Assembly: GCF_006345805.1 (NCBI RefSeq)
Contig: NC_043012.1
Coordinates: forward strand, 57,846,001 to 57,910,000
Length of the DNA stretch: 64,000 nt
From: Octopus sinensis
Taxonomy: Eukaryota
Reading direction: 5' to 3'
Position 1 is the first letter of the stretch. The number at the start of each line of letters is the position of its first letter. The notes below the pieces were generated by a model. That model had not been told where the DNA came from. It did not search any database and saw nothing but the letters and a program-made list of their open reading frames with translations. Of the stretch, positions 7,692 to 64,000 are shown one piece after another. The translations under genes were made by a program, and so were the position numbers.

Positions 7692-7945
7692 TTGGATCGT
7701 TCAGAGTCAAAATGCCATCCTGCCACTGTTTTCAATGTCATCCACTATGCAGAACTACTGTCCTGGAAGAAAATGAACCATGGCTCTGAAAACGGGATAA
7801 TCTGATGGTGTAAGTTCTGGACAATAGATAGAGTGAGGCATTGACAGTTCAAAGGCAGTTCTTGGGTCTTCCACTTCCTTTAGTTCTTTTGCCGCTGTTT
7901 TTGCACATAGTCCATTTTTATACTGGTACTGCAAAATGTGTTTAG
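7692..7945 (-). pseudogene. Highly decayed mariner transposase remnant, probably internally deleted
   Basis: Minus translation includes PHSIYCPELTPSDYPVFRAMVHFLPGQ*, resembling the mariner PHPPYSPDLAPSDYHLF motif. It is joined to [20 protein letters not shown], which resembles an N-terminal HTH. No TIR pair found. Confidence 0.5.
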
Positions 7946-8087
7946 CATAGTTATCTTCCCTTTAAGGTTACTACATCCTGATCTAAAAGTTCATCTGGTA
8001 GTCAGTCTTCTGCGGAATGGGGTCATGGAATCTAACATATATATATTTGTCTTTGATAGGTTTTCAGTTCTATCTATCTACTATCTA

Positions 8088-11640: not shown

Positions 11641-12923
11641 TTAGGTTGTCAAGAAAGTTCCTCCGGTTTTTAACCTTTAAATTCAGATGCACATATTCGG
11701 CCCAAACAAAACTTTATTAATCGAAATGATCACCATCAGAATCAACACACTTTTGCCAACGCGAATCAAGTTTATTTATGCTAGTATCGTAAAAATCCTG
11801 CGTTCTGGTGGTGATGAAGTCGTTGAAGGCGTGTTTGGCATCATCTTGGTTTTTGAAGCATTTCTCACGCTGGAAGTTGTCGAGATGCTTGAAAGAGTGG
11901 TAGTCGGTAGGCGAGAGGTCTGGTGAGTATGGCGGATGAGGCAGTGTTTCGTAGCCCAATTCGTTCAACTTCTTCAGGGTCAGTTATACGACGTGCGGCC
12001 GAGCGTTGTTGTGGAGACGAATTGGTCCTTTTCTATTGACCAATGCTGGCGGTTGTTGTCGGAGTTTCTTATGCATTTCATCTTATGCATTTGCTGACAG
12101 TACTTCTCTGTTGCAATGGTTTTGCATGGATTCAAAAAACTGTGATGGATGAGACCGGCCACAGACCACCAAACAGTCACCATTACCTTCTGTTGGTGCA
12201 ACTTTGGCTTCAGGAAGTACCGTGGAGCTTCGTCAGCGTCCAACCACTGAGCCAAGCGTCGCTGGTTGTCTTTAAGAATCCACTTTTCATCGCGAGTCAC
12301 ATGCGTTCATGTTGCGTAAAAGAAGGGAAGATAACACTTCAAAACGGCGTTTTTTTCTTTTTTTTTTGGTTGTCGTTCAATTCGTGTGGCACCCATTTCT
12401 GAAGTATTTTTGTTTTTCCAATCTCTTTCAAGTGGTTGGAAATTGTCGTATACGTTACGTGTAATTCAGAAGTAAGCTCTCGAACAGTTGTGCGTGGATT
12501 GGCCTCGACTAAGGCTCCTAGTTAATCGTTATCAACATCCGATGGTCGACCACTACGCCTTTCCTATTCAAGACTCTCGTCACCGCTACGAAATTTCTTG
12601 AACCACCATTGTGCTGTACATTCATTAGTTGTTCCTGGGCCAAACGCATCGTTGATATCGCGAGATGTTTCAGCAGCTTTTCGGCCTAGCTTGAACTGTA
12701 ATAAGAAAATTGTACGAATTTGCTTTTAGTACATGTTGTATTCAATATTCCGGAAAAAATGACCTAATTATTCAAAAATAAGAAGAGTAACAGGATTAGA
12801 TAAAGCAAAAAACGGGTTTTAAAATGATATATAAAGTCAAAGTATTTTAACAAATATTAATTTGAAAATACATCATTTAAAACCAAAATTTAAAATTCCA
12901 CAAGAACTTTCTTGACAACCTAA
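11641..12923 (-). mobile_element. Complete 1283-bp mariner (cecropia/Hsmar1-like) DNA transposon
   Basis: Perfect 20-bp TIRs ttaggttgtcaagaaagttc at 11641-11660 and (reverse complement) 12904-12923. TA at 11639-11640 and 12924-12925. Transposase remnant inside. Confidence 0.95.
11717..12734 (-). pseudogene. Mariner DD34D transposase pseudogene
   Basis: Translates to KQIRTIFLLQFKLGRKAAETSRDINDAFGPGTTNECTAQWWFKKFRSGDESLE*, TRDEKWIL, HQQKVMVTVWWS, HNNARPH, HPPYSPDLSPTDYH and RWQKCVDSDGDHFD. Several stops, and the second catalytic D is changed to N. Confidence 0.93.
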
Positions 12924-16279: not shown

Positions 16280-16487
16280 AAGGCAGCGAGGTGGCAGAAA
16301 TTTTAGCAAGCCGGGCGAAATGTTTAGCGGTATTTCATTTGTCTTTACGTTCTATTCCGCGGAGGTCGACTTTGCCTTTCATCCTTTCGGGGTCGATAAA
16401 TTAAGTACTAGTTGCATACTGGGGTCGATCTAATCGACTGGTCCCCTCCCCAAACATTTCGGGCCTTGTGCCTAGAGTAGAAAAGAA
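16280..16487 (+). mobile_element. SINE family A, full length
   Basis: aaggcagcgaggtggcagaa head, gtcgactttgcctttcatcctttcggggtcgataaattaag body, ggccttgtgcctagagtagaaaag tail. Confidence 0.85.
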
Positions 16488-16629
16488 TAAATCATAACTC
16501 ATCCAAAATAGTTTGCGTACTTATACTTCCTTATATACAAATTCAAAAGAAAGTATATTTTTTTTGCATGGAAATTGAAAAAAAAAATGTGCATGTTAAG
16601 AGGTTAGGGTGTTAAGTAGATAGACTCGT

Positions 16630-16815
16630 TACCGCGCCGGAATAAATGGTTAGTTGCATTTCGACCGTCTTTATGTTCTGAGTTCAAATTCCACCGAGGT
16701 CAGCATTGCTTTTAATTTTTTCGGGGGTCGATAGAATAACAGAATTGGAGTCGATGTAATCGACTTAGCCCCTCCGGAAAATTGCTGACCTCTTGTCAGA
16801 AATTGAAACCAATCA
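16630..16815 (+). mobile_element. SINE family A (diverged)
   Basis: gttctgagttcaaattccaccgaggtc B-box region and gtcgatgtaatcgact motif. Confidence 0.7.
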
Positions 16816-16945
16816 TATCGGAGAACTTGTGTCCGTAATCCAAGGGCGCAAAACATAGTGCAAGCGTTCTAACCTAACTGTATGCCTGTATGCTATGAAG
16901 TCCATGTAATGTTCATCAGACAAACATGTAGCTAGTAGGCTATAT

Positions 16946-16989
<44 letters not shown>

Positions 16990-17244
16990 TTTTCGAAATT
17001 TATTCTCTTATGAGGTTTTCCACGCTAATCTACCTGACAACTTCTTGTTAAGTTTTCCTTATTAGTAGTTGTCCTTAATTGCTAAATTTTTATTCCGAAA
17101 AAACTTTTCCTCTCCCGAAATGCAATTCGTAAAAATATGCCATTTACGGATGTATATATGTAAACTCACCCATGTGCTTCGTTGATGTTGATCAGTTAGC
17201 TGATCGGCTTAAGCGGGACAGGGTCGTTTATTTATGATACATTC

Positions 17245-17292
17245 AGGCCTGCTGATGAATACGTAAGTATGAAATCACTGTGATACAGGTCT
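17245..17292 (+). ncRNA. Type I hammerhead ribozyme, copy 1
   Basis: aggcctg-CTGATGA-atac(gtaa)gtat-GAAA-tcac-t-gtga-T-A-caggtct. Complete core, 7-bp stem I (one G.U), 4-bp stem II with GNRA loop, palindromic stem III. AUA cleavage predicted after 17285. Confidence 0.9.
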
Positions 17293-17718
17293 TATTTTTT
17301 TCAATGTCTTATTTTGAAAAATTGCATTCGGTGTGATTAGTAATATTTTTGGTAGAAATGACTAATTGGTCCCTCTTAGCGTGTGGCATGTATGTATAAC
17401 GCTCTCTGGCATGTATGTATAATGCCCTCTATATATAATTAATATGTTCAATAAGAAATAATTATTTTCGAAATTTTTCTCTTATGAGGTTTTCACGCTA
17501 TCTACCTGACAATTTCTTGTTAAGTTTTCCTTATTAAGTAGTTGTCCTTAATTGCTAATTTTTATTCCGAAAAAACTTTTCCTCTCCCGAAATGCAATTC
17601 GTAAAAATATGCCATTTACAGGATGTAATATATGTAAACTCACCCATGTGCTTCGTTGATGTTGATCAGTTAGCTGATCGGCTTAAGCGGGACAGGGTCG
17701 TTTATTTATGATACATTC

Positions 17719-17766
17719 AGGCCTGCTGATGAATACGTAAGTATGAAATCACTGTGATACAGGTCT
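17719..17766 (+). ncRNA. Type I hammerhead ribozyme, copy 2
   Basis: 48/48 nt identical to 17245-17292. Cleavage predicted after 17759. Confidence 0.9.
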
Positions 17767-19069
17767 ATATTTTTTAAATGTCTTATTTTGAAAAATTGCA
17801 TTCGGTGGGATTAGTAATATTTTTGGTAGAAATGACTAATTGTCCCTCTTAGCGTGTGGCATGTATGTATAACGCTCTCTGGCATGTATGTATAATGCCC
17901 TCTATATATAAATATATATATATATATATATCTCAATATGTAGACAAAATGCATGTGAGTGTGACACCCAAGCAAAGATCGGCGCAGTGAAGGATCCACA
18001 CTCCACTGCCGTTGGTTTTCTTCTGTCTCCTATAACATTGCTGATAATCTGGATTTTGAGAATAAAAAATGAGCTTTCAACACCTGACAAATTACGTACT
18101 GCGAAACACTGAAGCTAAACATTACAAATTTATATAATAAATAAATAACTATTATGTAATCATGGTGGTGATTTTCCGAAACTCGGGTATTTTCCATTTA
18201 TCATCGAATACCTTATCTATTTTTTCTATGTCGTCAACGCTCTAATGCACACACACATACACACTCATAATACATACACAAACACATACATACATACATA
18301 TATGTATGTATACATACATATACATACACACATTCATACATGCATACATACATGTATATACATACACATACATGCATACATACAAAAGTAGTATTGATAC
18401 CAAAATCAATCATTATGTCCAACTTAAAGTTGATGCACTATTAGAAAATCGAATAGAGAGGTAGTCTTTCTGGAGATTCTCTAGTGTAGATACCCATTGC
18501 TTGAATGTCCAGGTATATATCGTAGAGGACTAAAATCGTCTGCAATAGTTGCCGGAACTACAAGATCACCTGATTTCTGCATACTGTGTTTCCTCAGTAG
18601 CAAATACTAGGACACCGCATGGCAGTTAAATCTGCGATATAATCAGCGATTACTGCAACATTAGGCATTCTGACAACACATACACATTGAGTTCGATATA
18701 AAGATTGCTTTCCTGTATTAATATTCCTTCTGTTGCTAATCTATTCTTATAAATAAGCCTGCTGTTATTTAGCGATATCAGTGTCTGAAACAAATAACGC
18801 AGATATTTTATATACAGTTGGCAGTGAGATTTGGCTAGTATACAGTCATCGGTCATGTAGCACTGACGAAATACTGTATTTTGAAAACAAGTGGTTTAGT
18901 AGTTCTGGCACCTATCTCAAAGGTTTCACGTCTAATACGAGATATTCGTGCCTATCTACGCACCGTGCGTCTGCATGAGAGGAAATCTCAGGGCAAAAGA
19001 CGCAGTATTCGGCGTTCAAAAACATTACATCCACGTTAAGTAGAATATATAATATATATATATATATAG

Positions 19070-21482: not shown

Positions 21483-21700
21483 AAGGCGACGAGCTGGCAG
21501 AATCGTTAGCACGCTGGACGGAATACTTGGCGGTATTTTGCACGTCGCTACGTTCTGAGTTCAAATTCAGCCGAGGTCGATTTAGTCTTTCATCATTTTT
21601 GGGGTCGATATTTCACTTACCAGTTGCGTATTGGGGGTCGATGTAATCGACTGTCCCCCTCCTCCAAGACTTGGGGCCTTGTGCCTAGAGTAGAAAGGAT
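21483..21700 (+). mobile_element. SINE family A, full length
   Basis: aaggcgacgagctggcagaatcgttag..gttctgagttcaaattc..ccttgtgcctagagtagaaagg. Confidence 0.85.
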
Positions 21701-23927: not shown

Positions 23928-24158
23928 ATATTTTTTATTGCCCACAGGGGACTAAACATAGAGGGGACAAACAAGGACAGACAAAGGGATTAAGTCGATT
24001 AATCAACCCCAGTACGTAACTGGTACTTATTTAATCGACCCCGAAAGGATGAAAGGCAAAGTCGACCTCGGCGGAATTTGAACTCAGAACGTAGCGGCAG
24101 ACGAAATACCGCTGAGCATTTCGCCCGGCATGCTAACGATTCTGCCAGCTTGCAGCCC
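23928..24158 (-). mobile_element. SINE family A with alternative (A2) tail
   Basis: Reverse complement of the family A head and body, followed by the cttaatccctttgtctgtccttgtttgtcccctc..gtgggcaataaaa tail. Confidence 0.85.
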
Positions 24159-29673: not shown

Positions 29674-30014
29674 TTATATGGACGCTCAAAGGTCATACAA
29701 ACCCCGGTTGAGAAACACTTTAAATTCTAAAGTGTTTCTCGTTAGCATACGGGACGAGTAACAAGTTTTATTTTTGCATTCCGTTGCGGTTTAATTCCCT
29801 CTCTACCGAATCTATTTTCAACAACGGACTCCTTAAAATTTTATATGAACGCCGAAGGGTTATATGAACGCTCAAAGGTCATACAAACCCCGGTTGAGAA
29901 ACACTTTAAATTCTAAAGCGTTTCTCGTTAGCATACGGGACGAGTAACAAATTTTATTTTTGTATTTAGTTGCGGTTTAATCCTCTTTCTACTCAATCTA
30001 TTTTCAACAACGGA
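29674..30014 (+). repeat. Tandem duplication (155-bp units, 186-bp period), each with a 13-bp hairpin
   Basis: Copies at 29674-29828 and 29860-30014. Hairpin gagaaacacttta-aattc-taaagtgtttctc at 29710-29740. Confidence 0.9.
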
Positions 30015-30269
30015 GAGGTTAATGTAACCGAAGCCCACCCTGCTTATCTTTGGAATTATAAAAGACTCTTCGTTGACTAATGATTACTCTGCAGAGGAAT
30101 TTGAAGCATTTCTATTCTGTTGCCATATTTTGACATAATACCGATGGCTTTTTCTTTTAAATTCATAGATATTAATTGATGACTAACAGATGGTTAGGAA
30201 AGAAATGCAGTTTTAATTCAGAGAATAATTTTAGTTGCTAAATACACACAATTATGTACGTTCTCACAT

Positions 30270-30569
30270 TCGCGCCCTCCACCACAAACACTGCCTCACC
30301 GCAGCCGCCGCCGTCGCCGCCATAGATACCACTACAAGCACCATAAACAGCAGCACCACCACTACCACCAGAACCTCCACAACCACAACAACCACTACAA
30401 CTACCACCACCACCACCACAATCAACAATAACAATGCCGCCGCCGTCGCCACTACCGCTATCAAAACCATCGACATCATCACCAACAACACCACCACCAC
30501 CACCACCTCTACCACACATGCCACTGCCACCGACACTGCCGGCATGAGCAAGATAGCTAACACCCCCCA

Positions 30570-30600
<31 letters not shown>

Positions 30601-31326
30601 ATCACCACCACCTCCACCTCCACCGCCGCCGCCACCACCACCTCCATTACGGCACCCATCACTACCATAATCGCTAATAGCACTATTAATATGAACACCA
30701 CCACCGCAGCACCACCACCAATACCACCAGAAACACTACAACGACCATCATCGCTAAAACCACAACCACCACCTCCGATACTACCACCAAAATCACCACC
30801 ACAACCGCCATCATCATCATCATCATCATCATCAATAGCACCCCCACTAGAACCCCCCCCCCAAAAGAAACCCCATGTAACTTTATAATAATTGTCATTA
30901 TCCTCTCGTCCTCTCCACCTCTCCTCCCTCCTCTTCTTCATCGTCATCATCATGGACATCCCCAAGCAGCCTTACAATCATCAACAACACCAACGCCACG
31001 ACGGTCCTCCTCCACCACCTCTTTCTCCACATTATCATCATTATCATCATCATCATCATCATCACTCTCAGGGGCAGCAGCAGCAGCAGCAGCCTCGTCG
31101 ACATTAACATCGTTGTTGGCACATCATCAACATCATTATCACGATCATTTTCTCCCCCCCCCCACAGCGCCATAACAACTAAAATGCCTTCAACTTTCTG
31201 TCACGAACAATCATTATTATACATTTTCTCTTTCTAAAGTCACCATCGTCATCATCATCATCATCATCATCATCATCACCATCTTCATGATGATGATGAT
31301 CATCATCATCGTCATCGACATCGTCG

Positions 31327-31365
<39 letters not shown>

Positions 31366-31639
31366 CATCATCATCATCATCATCATCATCACCATCATCA
31401 CCACCACACCATCATCATCATCATCATCTCATCATCACCATCATCATCATCACCCATCATCTCATCATCATCATCACCATCTTCATGATGATGATCATCA
31501 TCATCATCGTCATCGACATCGTCGTCATCATCATATCATCATCATCATCATTCATCATCCCATCATCATCATCATCATCCTCATCATCATCACCCTCTTC
31601 ATGATGATTGATCATCTCATCATCGTCATCGACATCGCG

Positions 31640-31675
<36 letters not shown>

Positions 31676-31829
31676 CCCATATCACATCATCATCATCATC
31701 ATCATCACCATCTTCATGATGATGATCATCATCATCATCGTCATCGACATCGTCGTCATCATCATCATCATCATCATCATCATCACCATCACCATCATCA
31801 TCAACATCATCATCACCATCATCATCATC

Positions 31830-31861
<32 letters not shown>

Positions 31862-31936
31862 CATCATCATCGTAGTTGCCATTCTTGTCGCCACCATCAT
31901 CATCATAATGATAATCATTATCATCATCATCATCGT

Positions 31937-31967
<31 letters not shown>

Positions 31968-32600
31968 AGGAGCAGTTGTGATTATCTTTACCCTCATTAT
32001 CATAATAATTATGTCACCACCACTACCATCATCATCATTATCATCCCCACCAACCGCCACCACCACCACCACCACCACCACCTCTTCTATCGTCGTCATC
32101 ATTATCATCATTGTTATCATCGTAACCGTCATATTATCTTTACCACCGTTGTCTTCTTCTTCGTCGTCGTCGTTGTCATTACCATCATCATCACCATCAT
32201 CGTAATCGTAATCAGTAACATCATCATCATCATCATCATCATTATCATCATCACCGTCATCATCACCATCATCATAGTCTTAATCATCATCGTCGTCGTC
32301 ATCATCGTCGTCGTCATCATCCCATCATCATCATCATCATCACCATCATTATCATCATCACCGTCATTATCACCATCATCATCGTCGTCGTCATCATCCC
32401 ATCATCATCATCATCATCACCATCATTATCATCATCACCGTCATTATCACCATCATCATCGTCGTCGTCATCATCACCATCATCATAGTCGTAATCATCA
32501 TCGTCGTCGTCATCATCATATCGTCGTCGTCGTCATCGCCATCGCCATCTCCGTAGTCGTCGTAATCCCCGTCGTCCTCACCATCGATCTGTGTCTCTGC
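30270..32600. repeat. Cryptic trinucleotide low-complexity region (ACC/GCC, then CAT/CGT)
   Basis: Degenerate (ACC)n/(GCC)n runs to about 31100, then a long (CAT)n array with recurring variant blocks. Confidence 0.95.
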
Positions 32601-33654
32601 AAGTCTCTCCTTCTTGCTTCGGTTACTTCATTGGACCTGCAATAATAAACACAAATATCAGCTGAGATTCCACCAAGTCACTTCATATTCAGTCACGAGT
32701 TTCCCTCTTTTCGCCAGTAATCACCCCCACCCCCACCACTACCACATGCGCGCGCGCGAACACACACACACATATACACTCATACACACATATACGTACA
32801 GTCATACATACACATATACACATAAACGTATATGCATACATACACACACATATACACTCATACACACATATACGTACAGTCATACATACACATATATACA
32901 TAAACGTATATGCATACATACACACACAAATATTTACAGTCAGTGCGCACATAGATGCGGATACGTACACATCGCTCATACACACGCATACCGACATACA
33001 TACATACTTACATACACACATACATACATACATGTACACACATACAGGCATAGACATATGCATATAAACACACATACACATCCTCACCTAAGCACGTACA
33101 CATTTTCGCACACACACACTCATACACATAAACACACACCCACTCACACATACAGGCATATACACGCATACCCATATACTTACACACACGCACACTCACA
33201 CACGTCGCTATACATACATAAGCAGCATTAGCACCGACATAGGTCGATACACACACGTACACATACACGCAGTCACCACATACCCACATTTACACAAATG
33301 CACACACAAGAAAACTTACAAAATACAACTCTCACTCATACACACACACATACACGCACACACAGACACACACACACACACACACACACATACATCCATT
33401 CACAAAAGCGATATTTTCTAAGCGATTTTATACTCTGACTGAAAAGTTTTTTTGGTTTTATCTTCATCGTTAATTATATACAGTGACATAGTTTATAATT
33501 ACGAAGTTGTACTAATGAGATTTGAAGTTCGTTGACTAATTTATAATTTACGGGTAATTCATTTCCGTGTTCCTATTTGAGATCTTTCAGCACTATATCT
33601 TGGCAGGTTAGGTTAGCGGTTACGTAACGTTGGGGCTCCTACTCGCTACTCGAT

Positions 33655-34242
33655 CTGGCAGAAACATTAGTTGCGTACTGGGGTCGATCTAATCGACTGG
33701 CACCCATACCAAAATTTTGAGCCTTGAGCCTCGAGTAGAAAAGAATATTTATAGATCTAAGGGCAGTGAGCTGGCAGAAACGTTAGTACGCCGGACGAAA
33801 TGTTTAGCGGTATTTCGTCTGCCGCTATGTTCTGAGTTCAAATTCCGCCGAGGTCGACTTTGCCTTTCGTCCTTTCGGGTCGATTAAAAAAGTACCAGTT
33901 ACGCACTGGGGTCGATATAATCGACTTAATCCGTTTGCCTGTCCTTGTTTGCCCTCTCTGTCTTGGGTAGTAAAGAAATAGGTATTTCGTCTGCCGTTAC
34001 GTTCTGAGTACAAATTCCGCCGAGGTCGACTTTGCCTTTCATCCTTTCGGGGTCGATAAATTAAGTACCAGTTTCGTCCTGGGTCGATTTAATCGACTGT
34101 TCCTCCTCCCCCCAAATTTCGAGCCTTGAGCCTCGAGTAAAAAAGAATATATTCTTTGTAGAAAGGCGGCGAGCTGGCATAAACGTTAGCAAGCCGGGCG
34201 AAATGCCTAACGGTTTTTCGTCTGTCTTTAAGATCTGAGTTC

Positions 34243-40881: not shown

Positions 40882-41035
40882 AACGTCGAAAAATACCTTA
40901 GAAATGACAACCCAGGTTCGAAATTTCCCCCAAGACACCTGATGAAGTTCGAGAGTATATAAGCCGAAACGTTGTGTTATCAACAAACAAGATGAGGACA
41001 AATATCCGTCGAATGTAAATAATGTAAATAATGTC
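40882..41035 (+). mobile_element. Penelope-type terminal module with minimal hammerhead (about 40934-40978)
   Basis: gacac-CTGATGA-A-(stem II diverged)-GAAA-cg-TT-gtgtt. Same family as 57933-58110 (-) and 58190-58337 (+). Confidence 0.7.
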
Positions 41036-45728: not shown

Positions 45729-46460
45729 TGGGCCCTGCCCGTATTGAGTTACTCTGCTCTCTTTCTAAAATGGACAAATGTTGAGCTACAGAATTTGGGT
45801 AGAAGAACTAGAAAGCTGCTCACGATGCACAACTCTCTCCACCCTAAAATGATACTGACCGATTCTGCCTACCAAGAAAGAAAAGTGGCAGAGGATTGCT
45901 AAATATAGAAGACCTTGGAGAATATTGCGTTACTGGGCCTGAAAATTTATGTTGTGCAGAGTAAAGAAAGAAAACTATCGGGAGTCCAAAATACCGATAA
46001 AGTAACCGAAGCTGTTGGAGAAATGAAAATGAAAAGGTAGAACAGTCCAGCAAGCAACTGAAAGAAATGGAACTACATGGCCAATTCGAAGTGAAGATCA
46101 CTTGATCTCGTTGACGAACGGGAATTTGAAACGAGAGACAGAAAAGCCAATTGTAGCAGCTCAAGAACAAGCTCTTAGGATAAACCTGATAAAGCAAAGA
46201 TAGACCAAACTAAGTCAGATAGCAAATGTAGAATCAACAGGAAAGGAGACGAAAGTATTATACACGTTTTTAGCGAGTGCAGTATACTAGCAAAAAAAGT
46301 ATATAAACGCTGACTGTCTGGTCAGAAGATTGCACGGGGATGTTAGCTGTGTGTGGTTTCGAAACAAGAAAAAAATGGTAAGAACACGAAGCAGAGGCTG
46401 TAATAGAAAATGAAAATTACAAGATCTTGTGGGATTTTCCCGTAAAGACTAACCATAGAA
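45729..46460 (+). pseudogene. Decayed fragment of a second R4/Dong-like RLE retrotransposon
   Basis: WALPVLSYS..WTNVELQNLGRRTRKLLTMHNSLHPK..RGLLNIED; LHGQF; AAQEQAL; DSKCRI..ESIIHVFSECSILAKK; VIENENYKILWDF. Confidence 0.8.
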
Positions 46461-46509
46461 GATGAGGATGATGATGATGATGATGATGATAATAATAGTA
46501 ATAATAATG

Positions 46510-46544
<35 letters not shown>

Positions 46545-46549
<5 letters not shown>

Positions 46550-46768
46550 TATTGGTTTCAAAATTTTCCACAAGGGCAGCAGTTTTGAGGGAAGGGATGA
46601 GTCGATTATCTCGACATCAGTGTTTAATTGGTACTTATTTTATCGACCTCGAAAGAATGGAATCAAAGTCGACCTCGACGGAATTTGAACGCAGAACGTA
46701 CCAACGGGCGAAATATCGCTAAACGTTTCGTCCAGCGTGCTAACGATTCTGCCACCTCGCCGCCTTTA
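46545..46768 (-). mobile_element. SINE family A
   Basis: Reverse-complement head (gctaacgattctgccacctcgccgcctt) and body. Confidence 0.8.
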
Positions 46769-46816
46769 ATAATAATAATAATTATAATAATCATGATAAT
46801 AATAATAATAATAATG

Positions 46817-46876
<60 letters not shown>

Positions 46877-49800
46877 GAACACCGGGGGACTTTTAAGATG
46901 TAAGAAGGAAAATTCAGAGCTCCGAAACCTATCCACAAACATCGAAAACAAGGACATCCTATGGAGCCAAAGTTTTACTAACAAAGAATTGGACTGTATC
47001 CGAGTAAGTAATACTAATTGAAATTTATTACTATTTTCGAAACGAAATGATGTATTTTGACTCGATATCATCTCCACCTCTAACGCAACACATGTAAACA
47101 TACGTGAAACATCACGACCATCCCCGACTCCAAACACCATGTACAAAGGAACTACGAAGAAATTAAATGCCACCGATACTATTCAACCCAAGAATAACAA
47201 TCGAGCGGTACGTACATTAAACCTACAACAAAAAATGTACGAAAAACTACACGTGCGAAATAATGTGACAACAGAAATAAACGGACCGGTACCCTACGAA
47301 AATGACGACCGTCAAAATAATGGGCGGACGTTGTACCTCATGTCCCGCAAATAAAACCCAAAAGACGTAAATGGACACGTGAGGAATACATTTCTATCTT
47401 ACACGCATACTTCACAGCAGTACTCTACCCAAAAATAAAAATACAACACATACATATAAAATATGGAAGGAAAATAATAGAGATATAGACTTGGATACAG
47501 CAATGAACCCTAATAAATTAGCTAACGTACGAAGATACATTCCCAACACAAAAAATATCAGAAATAGAAATAGAACACCTAAAAGAAAACATACACCAGG
47601 AAAATGTAGATAGAAGCCACACAATAATGCTCAATAATATAAACACTGAAACTGTAAAACACGAAGACAAACGCAACATTCCCAACAAACACGATGTAAA
47701 CAACGAAGGGGAGCCTAATGATTATGATAATATAAAAATAAAATAATCAAAGAACTGAAAACCACAGAGCTCAAAATGGACCACCGACCATACCTCCCAA
47801 GAATCAAAATAAACGAAATAACAACACCTATTATAACAGCATAAACCTAGCCGTCACTGAACTGATAGCCACTGAATCAAAAAAAGTGATATCACTGAGC
47901 TAAATAACCTAATATACGCAGCAGCCACTGCAGCCACAAAAGAAGCTGGATACTCACCCAAACCCGCCCAGACAGGAGTACCACCACCCAAACAAACCCC
48001 GTGGATAAATAACATCCAAAGCAAAATAAAAAAAATTAGAAAAGACCTGTCGATTCTTAATGAAATCAGCAAAAAATCAACGCTACTGAGCAACAAAAAG
48101 AGAACAAAAATACTCCGCAAATATAACATCACAGAGAAAGATTTGCCTGAAATAAAAGAAAAGCTGAAGCAAGATATCCTTGCCAAAGCACAAAGGATCC
48201 GCCGGTACAAGAAACGCCAACGCTTCTTTCAAGAAAACAAAAAGTTCAACTCCAACCCCAAAAAGTTCTACCAAGAACTTAGCAAAAATAAAATAGAAGT
48301 CACTGCAGCACCAACGGCAGAAGAATTGGAAGAATTCTGGAAAGAAATATGGTCGGCGAACGAACCACCAAAAAAAAAGGAGTATCAAAATAACAAACTC
48401 GGCATCTGAACAACTTTGGACCCCCATAACAACTGAAGAGGTCACCCAGGCACTGCAAAAACTAAGCAACTGGAAGGCACCTGGGCATGACAAGATCCCC
48501 AACTTCTGGTTGAAATATCTAACAGGAATGCACAAAAAGCTGGCTGAAAACTTTAACAACGTACTAGCAGAGCCAGAGACAATGCCTGAATGGCTCACGA
48601 AGGGGAAAACCATCTTAATTCCCAAATCAAATGAAACAGAAAAACCAGAAAACTACAGACCAATAACCTGCCTCCCTACTATGTTCAAGGCATTTACTGC
48701 AGTGATATCACAAAGGCTGAACAAGCACCTGGACGAAAACAAACTGTTCCCAGAAGAACAGAAAGGATGCCGCAAAGGCTCATATGGCTGTAAAGATCAA
48801 CTAATGATTAATAAAGCCATAACTGAAGACAGCCACAGAAAGAAGAAAGGCCTCAGTATGGCCTGGATTGACTACAAAAAGGCGTTTGATAGCATCCCCC
48901 ACACATGGATCCTCGAAACACTAGCCATTAACAAAGTAGCACCAACAATCATAAAATTCATAGAGCACTCTATGAATAAATGGCAAACAGTCCTACACCT
49001 CCAAACAAAAGAGGGACTCATGAAAACCAAAGACATCCCCATTAGAAGAGGAATATTCCAGGGAGACACGCTCTCTCCACTCCTTTTCTGCTTGGCACTG
49101 TCACCTCTATCTGATATGCTAAATAGAACTGGATGCGGATATAAATGTTACGGCAAAACGATCAGCCACCTTTTATATATGGATGACCTAAAACTATACG
49201 CTGCAAATGACAAACAGCTGGAAACACTATTAAAGACAGTTCATGGATTTACCAAAGAAATAGATATGAAATTTGGATTAGAAAAATGCGCCAAAGTAAC
49301 CATGAAAAGAGGAAAAACTAGTTAAGAGTAACAACATCACACTAGATAAAACCAATGAAATAAAAGAATTAGACCAAAGCCAAACTTACAAATACTTAGG
49401 AATCCATGAACTAGATAAGACACAACACACACAAATGAAAGAGAAAATAAAAAAAGAATATTATAGACGAGTTAGATCAATACTAAACACAGAGCTCAAT
49501 GCCAAAAACAAGATAATAGGTATCAACACTTTAGCTGTCCCAGTTATAAGTTACAGCTACAATATCCTTAACTGGACACGAAATGAACTGACCAAAATAG
49601 ATAGGAAAACAAGAAAAATAATGACAGGATCTAGGATGCATCACCCAAAATCTGACATAGAAGACTATATATACAACGTATAGAAGGTGGTAGAGGCCTT
49701 ATACAGCTGGAAAACTACTATAAAATAACCACCATAGGACTGCAAAAATATCTACTTCAGAAGGAAGGAAAACTGATCCAGATAGCGGCAAAACACGAGC

Positions 49801-50848
49801 AAAACAAAAAACTGTTCTCAGTATTTAAGGAAGCTGACAAATACAAACAAGAAATCATACCACCTAATAAACATGAAGAAGAAGAAGATGAAGAAACAAC
49901 AAAAGCTATAAAACAAATGAAATCCAAACTAAAAATAGAACAGCAACGAACCATGATAAAACGATGGCAAGAAAAGCCCCTTCATGGTAAATACTGGACT
50001 AAACTAAACGCAAAAGAAAGAGACAAAGAAAAATCCCAGCAATGGTTGAGAAGCTCAGGACTCAAAGCAGAAACAGAGGGATTTTTAATTGCAGCACAAG
50101 ACCAAAGCCTCCCCACCAGAAATTACCAAAAACATGTAATGAAAAGAAAAATTACAAGTAACTGCAGAATATGTGGAGATGGACAAGAAACAATAAATCA
50201 TATTATCTCAAGCTGCCCAGTCCTGGCTAAGAAGGAATATATTCACAGACATGACAGAGTTGGAACCTACATACATTGGAAGCTATGCCAACATTATGGA
50301 ATAACAACAGAAAAAAGATGTATAGGCACACACCAGAAAAGGTCACAGAAAACGAGAAAGCAACCATACTCTGGGATATGCCGATACACACAGATAGAGA
50401 AATTAAGGCCAACAGACCAGATATAGTTGTCAGAGACCATGAAGAAAAAAAAATGCTTTCTAATTGATGTATCAATACCGGCTGATGACAACGTGTCTCT
50501 AAAAGAAATGGAGAAACTCTCAAAATACAAAGACCTGGAAATAGAGGTAACTAGAATGTGGAATCTGAAAACAGAAACAATTCCTATCATAGTAGGTGCA
50601 TTAGGCATGATAAAAAAATATTCAGACAAATACATAACAAAAACACCAGGACTTACAAACACATATAACATACAGAAAATTGCACTACTAGGCACTGCAC
50701 ACATCCTACGCAGAACACTTTCCATACAATAACCATCAGAGCATCACAACAAATCACAGCACATACCCAAGGCACACAGAGCTGCGCTCGGTAGTGAAGT
50801 GAAAGCACGCTATAAAAACAAAAATAAAACTCCTGAATAATAATAATA
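46877..50848 (+). mobile_element. R4/Dong-clade non-LTR retrotransposon (RT + CCHC + restriction-like endonuclease) inserted in (TAA)n
   Basis: Begins after (AAT)n at 46876 and ends with a ~100-bp 3' UTR + gaataataataata. Single long ORF remnant. Dong elements are known to target TAA repeats. Confidence 0.92.
47770..50732 (+). pseudogene. Frameshifted RT-RLE polyprotein of the R4/Dong element
   Basis: RT motifs NYRPITCL, WIDYKKAFDS, GIFQGDTLSP and YMDD. Zn knuckle CRICGDGQETINHIISSC. Endonuclease RPDIVV..LIDVSIP..KLSKY. About 6 frameshifts. Confidence 0.92.
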
Positions 50849-57932: not shown

Positions 57933-58128
57933 AGTTCTATATTTAAGATATGAGGAATTATATATATTATTTACATTATTTCCATTTGACGGATATGTGT
58001 CCTCATCTTGTTTGTTGTTAACAGAACCTTTCGGCTGATACACCCTCCAGCCTTCATCAGTGCCTTGGGGAAATTTCGAAACTGGGTTCTCATTCCTGAG
58101 GTAATTTTCGACCTGAATAATAATAATA

Positions 58129-58160
<32 letters not shown>

Positions 58161-58337
58161 AATAATAATAATAATAACAACAACTACAACAACATGAAAA
58201 AATACCTTAGGAATGAGAACCCAGGTTCGAAATTTGCCCAAGACACCTGATGAAGGGTGGAGGGTATATCAGCCGAAACGTTGAGTTAACAACAAACAAG
58301 ATAAGGACAGATATCCGTCAAATATAAATAATCTAAA
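57933..58337. mobile_element. Inverted pair of hammerhead-bearing Penelope-type modules around an (AAT)/(GAT) tract, inserted in a SINE body with 16-bp TSD
   Basis: TSD ttattctttgtaatac at 57917-57932 and 58338-58353. HHR motifs at 58020-58064 (-) and 58242-58287 (+). The host SINE body continues on both sides. Confidence 0.85.
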
Positions 58338-58441
58338 TTATTCTTTGTAATACTAGTACTTATTCTCTCGGTCTCTTTTGCCGAACCGCTAAGTCATGCG
58401 GACATAAAGAGACCAACATCGGTTGTTTTTCTGTAAATTCC

Positions 58442-59344: not shown

Positions 59345-60065
59345 GTTGTTGTTGTTGTTATTGCGTTAGTCCAACATTAACTTTATAAGATTCGATATAC
59401 TCGAAAAATGTATTCTTTATCCCCTCATCCGAAAGATCGCGGATATTGTATCCCGTTATTCCGGTTTGCCTCACGCATCGCTCCATGCGTTCGTTTCCCC
59501 TTTAAATTCGGCTAATTGGAGGTGGGGGAATCTCCTCCAAGCAGTTAATGTGGCTTCACACTCCAGTCTCTCTGGAAAACAGCTAAATGAGACATTTCTA
59601 TTAAAGTATGATATTTCAAACACCATCAGCTACATACAGACAAATTCGTGCCAAGTAGGGAGTCTCTATGTGGTAGCTAGATCTACTAAAAATAACAGCT
59701 ATGTCTGAAATAAAATGTTCGGAGGATAATGGTCGTTTTGACCGGTTTGGCATCTTCCTTAGACCTTAAAAATGTTTTACTTAACATAGTCAAGACCATG
59801 CTAGAATATCGCCATCATATCTGTTATCCATTCTCCTGGTGACGACTAAAATATAATACAGCATTGTAATAGGCCATTTTACTGAACAACAAGACATCGC
59901 TCGCAAATGAATATGATTTGTAAGGTGCTATGCTTTCGGTAATTGTTTCAAACACCTATGTATTTAGGCGCTATTATAAACACACACTTTACTAAATCCA
60001 TATTAACGTTTGGCTGTCTTGGAAACTGTGCAATTTCTAGTTTTATTATACATGAACCCAATGAA

Positions 60066-62400
60066 GGGGGTGAGCTGGCAGAATCGTTAGCACGCTGGAT
60101 GAAATACTTAGCTGTATATCGCTCGTCTTTATGTTCTGAGTTCAAATTCCGCCGAGGTCGACTTTACCTTTCTTCCTTTCGGGAGGGGGGGATCGATAAA
60201 ATAAGTACCTATTTCTTTATTACCAACAAGGGGCTAAACACAGAGGGGACAAACAAGGACAGACATAGGTATTAAGTCGATTACATCGACCCCAGTGCGT
60301 AACTGGTACTTAATTTATCGACCCCAAAAGGATGAAAGGCAAAGTCGACCTCGGCGGAATTTGAACTCACAACGTAACTCAGACGAAATACCGATAAGCA
60401 TTTCGCCCGGCGTGCTAACGTTTCTACCAGCTCGCCGCCTTTGTACCAGTTACGCGCTGGGTCGATGTGATCGACTTAATCCATTTGTATGTCCTTGTTT
60501 ATACTCTCTATGTTTAGCCCCTTGTGGGCAATAAAGAAATACGAATCGTTAAGGCGGCGAGCTGGCAGAAACTTTAGCACGCCGGGCGAAATGTCTAGCG
60601 GTATTTCGTCTGTCTTTACGTTCTGAGTTCCAATTCCGCCGAGATCGACTTTGCCTTTCATCCTTTCGGGGTCGATAAATTAAGTACCAGTTACGCACTG
60701 GGGTCGATGTAATTAACTTAATCCGTTTGTGTGTCCTTATTTGCTCTCTCTGTGTTTAGCTCCTTGTGGGTAGTAAAGAAATAGGTATTTCGCTTGTCTT
60801 TACGATCTGAGTTCAAATTTCGCCGAGGTCGACTTTACCTTTCTTCCTTTCAGGTTTCTAGAAAATAAGTACCAGTTATGCACTGGGATCGATGTAATCG
60901 ACTTAGCTCCCTCCCTACAAATTTCAGGCCTTGTGCCTATAGTAGAAAGCATTATACATGAACACAGGGCGATGTGTTGGTATCATCGTTACAGCACTTG
61001 ACAAAATACTTAACCGCATTCCTTCTGGCCTTACGTTCTGAGTTCAAACGCCGCTAGGGTCGACTTTACCTTCCATTCATTTCAGGGTTGATAAAATATG
61101 TACCAGTCAAACACTTGAGCTGATTTAACCGAATTACCTTTCACCCGTATTTCGGGTCTTGTGCTTATAGTAGAAAGAATCATACAGTAGCCGAAGGCGG
61201 TGAGCAAGTGGAATCGTAAGACCATCGGGCGATTGCTTTGTAGTATTTGTTCAGATTCTTTACGTTCCGTGTTCAAATCCTACTGACGTCAACTTTGCCT
61301 TTTATAATTTCGGAGTCGATAAAATAAAGTACAGTCTAATATTAGGTATGATGTATTGACTAATCACATCCCTCTAAAATTTTTGGCTTTTCGTCAAAAT
61401 TTTGATCACCTGGACATTGCTTCTTTACCTGTGTCGCGTAAATACTTTAGGGTTTCTTGCCCTGTCAAAATTTCATCTGTACCATTTAAAGATAGTCAAT
61501 AAACAGACTCGTTTTTCCTTTAATTTTCCCTCGTAACGAGCCATAACAATGCCGTGAAGTATTTTGTTTGGCTCGGTTACGTTATTCTGCCAGCTGGTCA
61601 CCTTAGATTTCCTTTTAATTTTGGCACAAGGCTAGCGATTTTAGGAAAAGGGTTGAGTACACCAGCAACGGTGTTTAATTGGTACTTATTTTCTCAACAC
61701 AGCGAGGTTTGAGTTCCGAACGTAGGAAACTTGAAAAATGCTGCAAAAAATTTTGTGCGACGCACCAACGAGATTCTGCCTGATCTCTGCTTTTAACAAT
61801 AAATCAAAAAGATGTGTTTTGATAGTGCATGGTAATTTCGTCACCATTCAAAATAATCTTTTCTATCTAGGCACAAGGCCCGAAATTTTAGGGGAGGGGT
61901 TCTGTCGATTAGATCGACCCCTGTACGCAACTGGTACTTAATTACCAGCCCCGAGAGGATGAAAAGCAAAGTCGACCTCGGCGGAATTTGAACTCAGAAC
62001 GTAAAGACAGACAAAATACCTGTTTCTTTATTACCCACAAGGGGCTAAACAGAGGGGACAAACAATGACACTCAAACGGATTAAGTCGATTACATCGACC
62101 CCAGTGCGTAACTGGTACTTAATTTATCAACCCCAAAAGGATGAAAGGCAAAGTCGACCTCGGCGGAATTTGAACTCAGAGCGTAACGGCAGACGAAATA
62201 CGGCTACGCATTTCGCCCGGCGTTCTAACGGTTCTGCCAGCTCGCCGCCTTATGAGAAATAGATAATCCTTTGTACTATAGGCGCAAGGCCTGAAATTGG
62301 GAGGGAGGGTGCCAGTCGATTTGAGCGACTCCAGTACGTTATTGGTACTTAATTTATCGACCCCGAAAGGTAAAGTCGACCTCGTCGGAATCTGAACTCA
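60066..62400. mobile_element. Dense cluster of about 10 family A SINE units in both orientations
   Basis: Approximate units: 60066-60200 (+), 60205-60440 (-), 60440-60540 (+), 60550-60955 (+, 1.5-mer), 60965-61185 (+), 61192-61400 (+), 61850-62250 (-, 1.5-mer), 62265-62400 (-). Confidence 0.85.
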
Positions 62401-63677: not shown

Positions 63678-64000
63678 ACGGCGAGCTGGCAGAATCATTA
63701 GCATGCCAAGTAAAATACTTAGCGGTATTTCGTCTGCCGCCACGTTCTGAGTTCAAATTCTGCCGAGGTCGACTTTGCCTGTCATACTTTCGGGGTCGAT
63801 TAAATAAGTACCATTTACGCACTGGGGTCGATATAATCGACTTAATCCGTTTGTCTGTCCTTGTTTGTACCCTCTGTGTGTAGCCCCTTGTGGGCAGTAA
63901 AGAAATAGGTATTTCGTCTGCCGCTACGTTCTGAGTTCAAATTCCGCTGAGGTCAACTTTCCCTTTCATCCTTTCGGGGTCGATTAAATAAGTACCAATT
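63678..64000 (+). mobile_element. Family A composite SINE (1.5-mer), running off the window
   Basis: Head, body and A2 tail, then the gtaaagaaata|ggtatttcgtctgcc junction and a second body. Confidence 0.85.

What the first reader, a model, noticed from the sequence alone, without database searches (positions are those of the whole stretch)
16985..17910. Tandem twin hammerhead ribozymes 474 nt apart: candidate cephalopod retrozyme / self-cleaving circRNA unit
Seen: two identical 48-nt type I HHRs (17245-17292, 17719-17766) with the complete CUGAUGA/GAAA/UH core. Stem I is 7 bp, stem II is 4 bp with a GUAA loop, and stem III is palindromic (AUCAC-U-GUGAU). In both copies stem I extends through a U-rich internal loop into acatt/aatgt, the geometry type I HHRs use to dock on loop II. 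A 9-bp hairpin (17187-17208) lies just upstream. The ~135 bp around the ribozyme are invariant between copies while the flanks differ. The array is non-coding and bounded by (TA)n. Known: tandem HHR repeats (newt satellite 2, Schistosoma SMalpha, metazoan non-LTR retrozymes, Penelope pLTRs) are transcribed as multimers, self-cleave to monomers and can circularise. Inference: a read-through transcript would release a 474-nt monomer (17286-17759) able to circularise and be retrotransposed in trans. I know of no description of this family in cephalopods but cannot search.
Basis: partly seen in the sequence, partly recalled or inferred. Interest (0 to 1): 0.9.

Follow-up and report, generated by a model that had tools for sequence, protein, structure and literature searches.

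The report
Tandem hammerhead ribozyme repeat (retrozyme-like)
Two head-to-tail copies of a 474-base non-coding repeat each carry a complete hammerhead self-cleaving RNA motif, which fits a known class of animal mobile elements (non-LTR retrozymes) that spread through small circular RNAs; it is probably a new member of that class, and nothing has been tested at the RNA level.

Summary
There are two direct tandem units: 16986-17459 and 17460-~17915. They are 97% identical over the whole unit. Each carries the same 48-nt type I hammerhead (17245-17292, 17719-17766) with a full CUGAUGA / GAAA / UH core. Helix I is 7 bp, helix II is 4 bp with a GUAA loop, and helix III is palindromic.

A structural descriptor finds only these two sites in the window. 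It finds almost nothing in 300 shuffles. The predicted 474-nt product (17286-17759) is non-coding, 33% GC and strongly self-paired (z about -5.5). The hammerhead strand folds better than its complement. Helix III is too weak alone (-0.2 kcal/mol) but strong between two copies (-10.1), as in newt and axolotl dimer-dependent hammerheads.

These features match the published working definition of metazoan non-LTR retrozymes.

Weak points:
- No Rfam hammerhead model matches.
- A model built from four published retrozyme hammerheads scores only 12.9 bits.
- Only one locus is available, so covariation, copy number and expression cannot be assessed.
- The cephalopod origin could not be verified.
- The (TA)n flanks are not diagnostic here.

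No Penelope ORF is nearby.

Verdict: new member of a known kind, moderate interest.

The parts
16941..16985 (.). Left flanking (TA)n microsatellite; possible insertion target.
   Evidence: TRF, period 2, 23 copies. Sequence upstream of it is not homologous to the unit.
16986..17459 (+). Repeat unit 1 (474 nt, GC 0.335).
   Evidence: Alignment of the two units, 97% column identity. blastn of the unit against the window finds only the two units. GC.
17460..17915 (+). Repeat unit 2 (~456 nt). It lacks the last ~20 nt of unit 1 and merges into (TA)n at the unit's own internal TATATATAA tract.
   Evidence: The right flank beyond (TA)n shows no significant homology to the unit junction (alignment score 17 against a null of 15 +/- 2.3).
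17245..17292 (+). Hammerhead ribozyme motif, copy 1 (type I). Helix I is 17245-17251 with 17286-17292. The core CUGAUGA is 17252-17258. Helix II is 17259-17270 (AUAC-GUAA-GUAU). GAAA is 17271-17274. Helix III is 17274-17284. H17 is A17285. Predicted cleavage is between 17285 and 17286.
   Evidence: Sequence, descriptor scan, energy of the hammerhead fold -9.3 kcal/mol.
17719..17766 (+). Hammerhead ribozyme motif, copy 2, identical to copy 1. Predicted cleavage is between 17759 and 17760.
17239..17307 (+). Extended helix I of copy 1. ACAUU (17239-17243) can pair with AAUGU (17303-17307) across an asymmetric internal loop (C17244 against 17293-17302, U-rich). The same arrangement occurs at 17713-17781 in copy 2.
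   Evidence: Sequence. This pairing is not chosen in the MFE fold of the whole monomer. Four of the 16 inter-copy differences lie in the loop.
17187..17208 (+). 9-bp hairpin with a UUAG loop at the tip of a long imperfect stem upstream of the hammerhead. The copy 2 equivalent is 17661-17682.
   Evidence: Two of its pairs are G-U, so it is specific to the plus strand.
17286..17759 (+). Predicted unit-length RNA released by the two cleavages (474 nt, GC 0.331).
   Evidence: Linear MFE -122.2 kcal/mol, z -5.53. Circular MFE -115.5, z -5.7, 65% paired. The minus strand gives only z -3.44. There are 19 G-U pairs on plus and 9 on minus.
17384..17430 (+). Internal 23-nt tandem duplication (TGGCATGTATGTATAACGCCCTC x2) within unit 1. 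The same feature is at 17857-17903 in unit 2. It forms a long hairpin in the fold.
   Evidence: TRF, fold.
17903..17931 (.). Right flanking (TA)n microsatellite.
   Evidence: TRF.

Best explanation
This is a genomic copy, about 1.96 units long, of a non-autonomous hammerhead-bearing retroelement of the metazoan non-LTR retrozyme kind.

Proposed mechanism:
1. Read-through transcription of the plus strand yields an RNA with two hammerheads 474 nt apart.
2. Helix III is too weak on its own. The two ribozymes, or two transcripts, therefore most likely pair through their palindromic helix III (AUCACUGUGAU) into a double hammerhead. Each then cleaves after A17285 and A17759.
3. The released 474-nt RNA carries a 5'-OH and a 2',3'-cyclic phosphate. 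Helix I holds its ends together, and a host tRNA ligase (RtcB type) can seal them into a highly self-paired circle. The single hammerhead in that circle is largely inactive.
4. A Penelope-like element's reverse transcriptase and endonuclease, acting in trans, copies the circle or a multimer. This gives tandem DNA copies inserted at a (TA)n tract.
5. The right end of the array sits exactly at the unit's internal UAUAUAUAA tract. That fits priming of reverse transcription by microhomology with the nicked (TA)n target.

Shown here: the motif, the tandem arrangement, the lack of coding capacity, the predicted folding, and the absence of an adjacent Penelope ORF.
Inferred: transcription, cleavage, circularisation, the enzyme that mobilises it, and the priming mechanism.
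For: - Core and helices: there is a complete catalytic core (CUGAUGA / GAAAU / AUA, which meets the CUGANGA / GAAAY / RUH filter used in PMC7229834) with three helices and an open helix I.
- Chance: these are the only two descriptor hits in 64 kb, against 1 comparable hit in 300 shuffles.
- Arrangement: one hammerhead sits in each unit of a head-to-tail repeat. This is the working definition of an active non-LTR retrozyme in 10.64898/2026.07.22.740005.
- Unit size: 474 nt lies within the reported 51-972 bp range and just above the 150-450 bp of PMC7229834.
- Composition and coding: GC is 0.33, below the <50% criterion; the longest ORF wholly inside the units is 39 aa, and the only longer one (62 aa, minus strand) runs out into the right flank.
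- Folding: the monomer gives z -5.5 linear and -5.7 circular, and the hammerhead strand folds better than its complement.
- Helix III: it is palindromic, -0.2 kcal/mol alone and -10.1 between two molecules. Published coral, mussel and axolotl retrozyme hammerheads have the same feature, as does the 'canonical metazoan type I' description in PMC4209133.
- Architecture: helix II of 4 bp and helix I of 6-7 bp is the canonical type, not the minimal Penelope type.
- Context: no RT or GIY-YIG ORF was found within about 5 kb. The only RT among ORFs of at least 110 aa in the window is a LINE.
- Independent model: a covariance model built only from four published retrozyme hammerheads ranks these two sites first in the window.
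- Target preference: (TA)n is a documented preferred target of some Penelope-like clades (PMC8557442).
Against: - No Rfam hammerhead family matches at gathering score, nor at E <= 10 even on a 91-nt slice.
- The model built from published retrozyme hammerheads gives only 12.9 bits, E = 0.25.
- Pair 10.1-11.1 is A-U and helix II is three A-U pairs plus one C-G. From my own knowledge G10.1-C11.1 is the usual pair, so activity may be low.
- An alternative fold that pairs UGAU of the core with AUCA of helix III is 2.8 kcal/mol more stable than the hammerhead fold.
- Only two units at one locus are available. There is no covariation, no copy-number evidence and no RNA evidence.
- No other copy was found in any searchable collection.
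- The folding z-score is not unique in this microsatellite-rich window: 3 of 24 random 474-nt segments reach z <= -5.5.
- The (TA)n flanks are non-specific here, with 75 such tracts in 64 kb.
- Loop 1 differs between the copies.
Confidence: 0.6

Rival explanations
1. It is the remnant of a Penelope-like element rather than a separate non-autonomous family. Two severely 5'-truncated copies inserted as a partial tandem would leave only the terminal repeat (pLTR) regions, each with its hammerhead.
For: - Penelope-like elements carry type I hammerheads in their pLTRs, insert as partial tandems and favour microsatellites, including (TA)n (PMC4209133; PMC8557442).
- Retrozyme consensus sequences in Xenopus are related to pLTRs, so the boundary between the two categories is thin.
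- About 20 nt is present at the internal junction but absent from the end of the array. This loosely recalls the one-sided 'tail' of Penelope insertions.
- A second repeat family in the window looks like a decayed minimal Penelope-type hammerhead.
Against: - Metazoan pLTR hammerheads are the minimal type: no helix III, long helix II with a 5' bulge, and helix I of 4-5 bp. This one is the canonical type.
- No RT or GIY-YIG remnant was detected within about 5 kb, nor as any ORF of at least 110 aa in the window.
- The hammerhead spacing is 474 nt, not about 3 kb.
Confidence: 0.2
2. It is a local tandem duplication, for example by unequal exchange or slippage between TA-rich tracts. The duplicated sequence happens to contain a hammerhead-like motif or a long-dead one. 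There is no present RNA function and no family.
For: - Only two units exist in the window, and none could be found elsewhere.
- The Rfam models do not recognise the motif.
- The window is saturated with (TA)n tracts that could mediate duplication.
- By my extrapolation, a multi-gigabase genome is expected to hold on the order of one chance motif of this quality.
- The identical run around the ribozyme is only marginally significant (p = 0.045).
Against: - A perfect core, three helices, a helix I extension and a palindromic helix III of the kind seen in validated retrozymes all occur together.
- Folding is asymmetric between strands and favours the hammerhead strand.
- The inter-unit junction is unique sequence, not a pure (TA)n tract.
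Confidence: 0.13
3. It is an assembly artefact: one real unit was written twice, for example from collapsed or duplicated haplotypes or from mis-joined long reads at a microsatellite.
For: - Ten of the 16 differences between units are single-base indels, several of them in homopolymer or A/T-rich runs. That error type is typical of uncorrected long reads.
- The array is bounded by microsatellites, which are hard to assemble.
Against: - The window has no N gaps.
- The two units also differ by substitutions and have different ends.
- The junction contains about 20 nt that is missing from the array's end, which a simple duplicate would not produce.
Confidence: 0.05

Closest known systems
Metazoan non-LTR retrozymes (Cervera & de la Pena 2020, PMC7229834), e.g. 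the Mytilus galloprovincialis 350-390 nt and Acropora millepora 220-240 nt repeats
   Same: - A type I hammerhead sits in each unit of a head-to-tail repeat, from dimers upward.
- The unit has low GC and no ORF, LTR, PBS or PPT.
- The monomer is highly self-paired.
- Helix II is 4 bp, helix I is 6-7 bp with an internal loop and an extension, and helix III is short and palindromic (one search gives the reference sequences).
   Different: - There is no detectable sequence similarity beyond the catalytic core (12.9 bits to a model of four reference hammerheads).
- The unit is somewhat longer (474 nt).
- Pair 10.1-11.1 is A-U and helix II is AU-rich.
- Only a dimer at one locus is known, with no expression data.
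- The host is claimed to be a cephalopod but this is unverified. I found no paper describing retrozymes in cephalopods.
Newt satellite 2 and axolotl retrozymes (dimer-dependent type I hammerheads)
   Same: Helix III is unstable as a hairpin but palindromic. Two ribozymes can therefore form a double hammerhead. Cleavage is then favoured in multimeric transcripts and suppressed in the monomer (PMC4209133; PMC7229834; here).
   Different: Helix III here has 4-5 potential pairs per arm with a central U-U, longer than the 1-2 bp of the amphibian motifs. Some monomeric activity is therefore conceivable. The amphibian families have 10^4-10^5 copies.
pDo500 satellite of Dolichopoda cave crickets (PMC2837043)
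   Same: It is a tandem repeat carrying a hammerhead in each unit; by my recollection the monomer is roughly 500 bp and the transcripts self-cleave. I saw only this paper's title and the start of its abstract, which say that the family has a catalytic hammerhead.
   Different: That one is a long satellite array conserved across a genus. Here there are only two units embedded in dispersed-repeat DNA.
Penelope-like element pLTR hammerheads (Cervera & de la Pena 2014, PMC4209133)
   Same: Both are type I hammerheads in direct repeats of a retroelement, associated with microsatellite targets. Penelope elements are the probable source of the enzymes that would mobilise this unit.
   Different: The pLTR motifs of animals are minimal: no helix III, helix II of 6-8 bp with a bulged 5' nucleotide, and helix I of 4-5 bp. 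They flank a roughly 3-kb RT / GIY-YIG ORF. Neither feature applies to the 17.2 kb motif.

Membership tests
Hammerhead ribozyme, type I | Conserved catalytic core: C3 U4 G5 A6 N7 G8 A9, G12 A13 A14, the A15.1-U16.1 pair, and H17 at the cleavage site. | tested here: met
   CUGAUGA (17252-17258), GAA (17271-17273), A17274 paired with U17284, and H17 = A17285. The second copy is identical.
Hammerhead ribozyme, type I | Three helices around the core, with helix I open (5' and 3' ends in helix I). | tested here: met
   Helix I is 7 bp including one G-U. Helix II is 4 bp with a GUAA loop. Helix III is up to 4 bp with a CUG loop. The hammerhead fold is -9.3 kcal/mol, although a competing fold is -12.1.
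Hammerhead ribozyme, type I | Match to the curated covariance models (Rfam hammerhead families). | tested here: not met
   There was no hammerhead hit at gathering score on the window. There was none at E <= 10 on 16900-18000 or on 17225-17315.
Hammerhead ribozyme, type I | Significant match to a model built from experimentally validated retrozyme hammerheads. | tested here: inconclusive
   Model R1 was built from coral, mussel and two axolotl sequences. It ranks the two sites first in the window, but at 12.9 bits and E = 0.25.
Hammerhead ribozyme, type I | Site-specific self-cleavage. | not testable with these tools
   This needs in vitro transcription of monomer and dimer constructs.
Metazoan non-LTR retrozyme | A type I hammerhead in every unit of a head-to-tail tandem repeat (dimer or more). 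| tested here: met
   Two units, each with the motif, 474 nt apart.
Metazoan non-LTR retrozyme | A short non-coding unit (150-450 bp in PMC7229834; 51-972 bp in the 2026 preprint) with low GC and no LTR, PBS or PPT. | tested here: met
   The unit is 474 nt with GC 0.335. The longest ORF wholly inside the units is 39 aa; a 62-aa ORF on the minus strand overlaps the 3' end of unit 2 and runs into the right flank. It is slightly above the first size range and inside the second.
Metazoan non-LTR retrozyme | The monomer RNA is predicted to be stable and highly self-paired. | tested here: met
   z is -5.5 linear and -5.7 circular, with 65% of bases paired. Caveat: 3 of 24 background segments of the window reach the same z.
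Metazoan non-LTR retrozyme | A multi-copy family dispersed in the genome. | not testable with these tools
   No further copy exists in the window. The source genome is not in any searchable collection.
Metazoan non-LTR retrozyme | Expressed as unit-length linear and circular RNA. | not testable with these tools
   No transcriptome access.
Metazoan non-LTR retrozyme | Co-occurrence with autonomous Penelope-like elements in the same genome. | tested here: inconclusive
   There is no Penelope ORF in the window. A decayed repeat family does exist whose consensus forms a minimal Penelope-type hammerhead. Octopus genomes do hold recently active Penelope families (PMC13282606), but the host is unverified.
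Penelope-like element pLTR | Direct repeats flanking an RT / GIY-YIG ORF. | tested here: not met
   The units abut each other. No RT or GIY-YIG domain was found in fragments within about 5 kb. The only RT in the window is a LINE at 48510-49325.
Penelope-like element pLTR | Minimal hammerhead architecture in animals: no helix III, long helix II with a 5' bulge, short helix I. | tested here: not met
   The 17.2 kb motif has helix II of 4 bp without a bulge, helix I of 7 bp, and a helix III (against the description).

The most novel reading that the evidence does not exclude
This is the first sighting of an active retrozyme family in cephalopods. The 474-nt unit would be multi-copy and transcribed, and would accumulate as an abundant circular RNA in octopus tissues. 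Penelope-like enzymes would copy it back into (TA)n microsatellites, with priming on the element's own internal (UA)n tract. That would explain why the array ends exactly at that tract.
Probability: 0.3. Interest if true: 0.5.

Novelty: new member of a known kind. Interest (0 to 1): 0.35.

Why it matters
If confirmed, it would extend ribozyme-made circular RNAs to a lineage where I found no published description. That lineage is studied for its unusual RNA biology and its repeat-rich genome. It would also give a compact natural cassette (two hammerheads 474 nt apart) for making circular RNA. The junctions offer a concrete, testable idea: Penelope-type machinery may prime on (UA)n microhomology at (TA)n targets. 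It would not change the general picture, because tandem hammerhead repeats that make circular RNA are already established from cnidarians to amphibians, including bivalve molluscs.

Tried and rejected
- Rfam at gathering score and at permissive E-values gave no hammerhead match. It returned only microsatellite-driven mir-297-like hits and snoRNA-like noise, which I dismissed.
- A model built from four published retrozyme hammerheads ranked the sites first but without significance.
- I looked for further copies in several ways, all negative:
  - blastn within the window;
  - exact-protein look-ups of two small ORFs of the unit;
  - pattern scans of metagenome, viral and prokaryotic collections.
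- I tried to identify the host. The LINE RT's best relatives are only 58% identical and unnamed. A SINE-derived ORF has no relatives at all. The cephalopod claim therefore stays unverified.
- I tested whether the array extends into the flanks. It does not.
- I tested whether the (TA)n flanks are informative. They are not, with 75 such tracts in the window.
- I considered a Pol III SINE-like element such as Schistosoma SM-alpha and rejected it. There are no tRNA-like genes. The unit also has many T4-T7 runs, including T7 directly after the hammerhead, which would terminate Pol III.
- I first read the other CTGATGA...GAAA hits (40939, 58029, 58247) as chance matches in a SINE. I re-read them as a separate decayed repeat family with a minimal hammerhead-like consensus.
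- Six-frame Pfam scanning by DNA reference failed because of stop codons. I replaced it with stop-free fragments.
Full report
**What is there**

Between two (TA)n microsatellites (16941-16985 and 17903-17931) lie two head-to-tail copies of a 474-nt sequence. Unit 1 is 16986-17459 and unit 2 is 17460 to about 17915. The units are 97% identical over their whole length. They show 16 differences, ten of them single-base indels. The unit occurs nowhere else in the 64-kb window. The sequences outside the (TA)n tracts are not homologous to it. Unit 2 stops about 20 nt short of unit 1's end, exactly where the unit's own TATATATAA tract merges with the flanking (TA)n. GC is 0.335. The longest ORF wholly inside the units is 39 aa; a 62-aa ORF on the minus strand (17811-17999) overlaps the 3' end of unit 2 and runs into the right flank.

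**The hammerhead**

Each unit carries the same 48-mer (17245-17292 and 17719-17766):

AGGCCUG / CUGAUGA / AUAC-GUAA-GUAU / GAA / AUCACUGUGAU / A | CAGGUCU

- All conserved core positions are present: C3-A9, G12-A14, the A15.1-U16.1 pair, and H17 = A.
- The motif passes the CUGANGA / GAAAY / RUH filter used by the group that defined retrozymes.
- Helix I is 7 bp and open, which makes it type I.
- Helix II is 4 bp with a GNRA-type loop.
It is at most AUCA/UGAU with a CUG loop.

My descriptor scan finds exactly these two sites on both strands of the window. In 300 dinucleotide-preserving shuffles it found one motif with helix I >= 5 bp and none as good. The motif is therefore not a chance product at the scale of this window. 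By my extrapolation, a multi-gigabase genome could still hold about one chance motif of this quality, so the tandem context matters.

**Negative and weak tests**

- No Rfam hammerhead family matches. This holds at gathering score and at E <= 10 on a 91-nt slice.
- I built a covariance model from four experimentally validated retrozyme hammerheads: coral, mussel and two axolotl sequences taken from the supplement of PMC7229834. It ranks the two sites first in the window, but at only 12.9 bits and E = 0.25.
- Likely reasons are the A-U pair at 10.1-11.1, the AU-rich helix II and the longer helix III.
- From my own knowledge, G10.1-C11.1 is the usual pair, so activity may be reduced.
- A competing fold that pairs UGAU of the core with AUCA of helix III is 2.8 kcal/mol more stable than the hammerhead fold.

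**Dimer dependence**

Helix III alone is worth -0.2 kcal/mol. Its sequence is nearly palindromic. Two copies can form a 5+5 bp intermolecular helix with a central U-U, worth -10.1 kcal/mol. Cofolding two 48-mers gives -31.1 kcal/mol against 2 x -12.1 for separate molecules.

This is the arrangement described for 'canonical' metazoan type I hammerheads: helix I of 6 bp, helix II of 4 bp, and a short palindromic helix III. It is also described for newt and axolotl motifs that cleave efficiently only as dimers (PMC4209133; PMC7229834). The coral, mussel and axolotl reference sequences show the same palindromic helix III.

**The predicted product**

Cleavage after A17285 and A17759 releases 17286-17759, which is 474 nt.

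- The linear fold is -122.2 kcal/mol against -94.1 +/- 5.1 for shuffles (z -5.5).
- The circular fold is -115.5 kcal/mol (z -5.7), with 65% of bases paired.
- The complement reaches only z -3.4.
- The plus-strand fold uses 19 G-U pairs against 9 on the minus strand. This includes two in the 9-bp hairpin 17187-17208.

The strand that carries the hammerhead is therefore the structured one. This window is full of palindromic microsatellites, however, and 3 of 24 random 474-nt segments reach the same z. The folding evidence is supportive but not decisive.

- The 'invariant 135 bp' is a 139-nt identical run (17154-17292). That is only marginally longer than expected from 16 random differences (p = 0.045).
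- Four of the 16 differences fall in the 10-nt U-rich loop 1. This speaks against a conserved docking surface there.
- The ACAUU/AAUGU extension exists in both copies, but the MFE fold of the monomer does not choose it.
- The (TA)n flanks are uninformative by themselves, since there are 75 perfect (TA)>=8 tracts in the window. (TA)n is nonetheless a documented target of some Penelope-like clades (PMC8557442).

**Context**

- No Penelope-type RT or GIY-YIG domain was found in stop-free fragments within about 5 kb.
- Among ORFs of at least 110 aa in the window, the only RT is a LINE (RVT_1 plus zf-RVT, 48510-50426).
- The window also holds a mariner pseudogene, many copies of a SINE-like repeat, and a second repeat family whose consensus resembles a minimal Penelope-type hammerhead.

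**What it is**

The features match the published working definition of a metazoan non-LTR retrozyme:

- a type I hammerhead in each unit of a tandem repeat, from dimers upward;
- a short, AT-rich, non-coding unit;
- a self-paired monomer;
- canonical rather than minimal ribozyme architecture.

The 2026 preprint argues that such elements are non-autonomous derivatives of Penelope-like elements. The main rival, a truncated Penelope tandem, therefore differs from the best explanation mostly in degree. I put 0.6 on the retrozyme reading, 0.2 on a Penelope pLTR remnant, about 0.13 on a functionless local duplication with a fossil or chance motif, and 0.05 on an assembly artefact.

**Mechanism, with status of each step**

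1. Read-through transcription of the plus strand. Inferred. Pol III is unlikely, because T4-T7 runs occur throughout the unit, including directly after the hammerhead.
2. Double-hammerhead formation and cleavage at both sites. Inferred from the energies and by analogy with known dimer-dependent motifs.
3. Helix I holds the ends together, and a host RtcB-type ligase seals them. Inferred from PMC7229834.
4. Reverse transcription of the circle or multimer by Penelope enzymes at a nicked (TA)n, giving slightly less than two units. Inferred. The array's right end at the internal UAUAUAUAA tract fits microhomology priming.

**Host and novelty**

I could not verify the cephalopod origin.

- The LINE RT's best relatives are 58% identical and unnamed.
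- A SINE-derived ORF has no relatives at all.
- The composition (35% GC), the microsatellite load and the SINE density are compatible with an octopus genome but are not diagnostic.
- No paper in the library combines retrozymes with cephalopod terms.
- Octopus genomes are reported to carry recently active Penelope families (PMC13282606), so a partner element would be available.

Tandem hammerhead repeats are already known in many phyla, including bivalves. This is best rated a new member of a known kind, with moderate interest (0.35), pending a genome-wide copy search and RNA evidence.

Noticed in passing
window 40889-41032 (+), 58190-58345 (+), 57966-58108 (-): A second repeat family of about 145 bp, 88% identical among three copies. 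Its consensus forms a minimal hammerhead-like motif: GACAC-CUGAUGA-A-GGCUG...CAGCC-GAAA-CGU-U|GUGUU. Helix I is 5 bp, there is a bulged A before helix II, and helix III is only the palindrome ACGU. This is the architecture described for Penelope-like element hammerheads. Two copies lie head to head around an (AAT)n(GAT)n microsatellite, and the third follows (AAT)n(AAC)n. No single copy passes the descriptor, since each has a broken helix or core. In addition, one consensus base had no majority among the three copies, and I chose the base that restores a pair (in the single-copy display the core pattern start for the first copy is 40939).
   Followed up: partly
window 11720-12725 (-): A mariner (Mos1-type) transposase pseudogene split over several frames. 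Pfam gives Transposase_1 at E = 1.8e-22 and HTH_48 at E = 8e-16. A possible further fragment lies at 7758-7961 (-).
   Followed up: partly
window ~46000-50500 (+): A decayed LINE. An RT domain ORF lies at 48510-49325 (RVT_1, E = 8e-32), followed by a zf-RVT ORF at 49917-50426. AT skew is strongly positive over 46-50 kb. The best database relatives are only 58% identical.
   Followed up: partly
window, more than 20 sites, e.g. 16280-16408, 16622-16725, 21483-21598, 24022-24150, 59901-60300, 63817-63914: A very abundant SINE-like repeat, 72-96% identical among copies. Two fragments lie just upstream of the hammerhead array. ARAGORN finds no tRNA-like gene in the window. An ORF derived from the repeat has no relatives in the protein collection.
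   Followed up: partly
window 30000-34000: A block with higher GC (0.42-0.45) and extreme negative GC skew (-0.39 to -0.59). It is made of trinucleotide-type repeats that give long low-complexity ORFs (His-, Thr-, Ile- and Pro-rich) on both strands. I did not determine whether any of it is a real exon.
   Followed up: no
window 17884-17946: Weak mir-297 and other microRNA-family matches (27 bits against a gathering score of 90). They lie on the (TA)n tract at the right end of the array and are microsatellite artefacts.
   Followed up: yes
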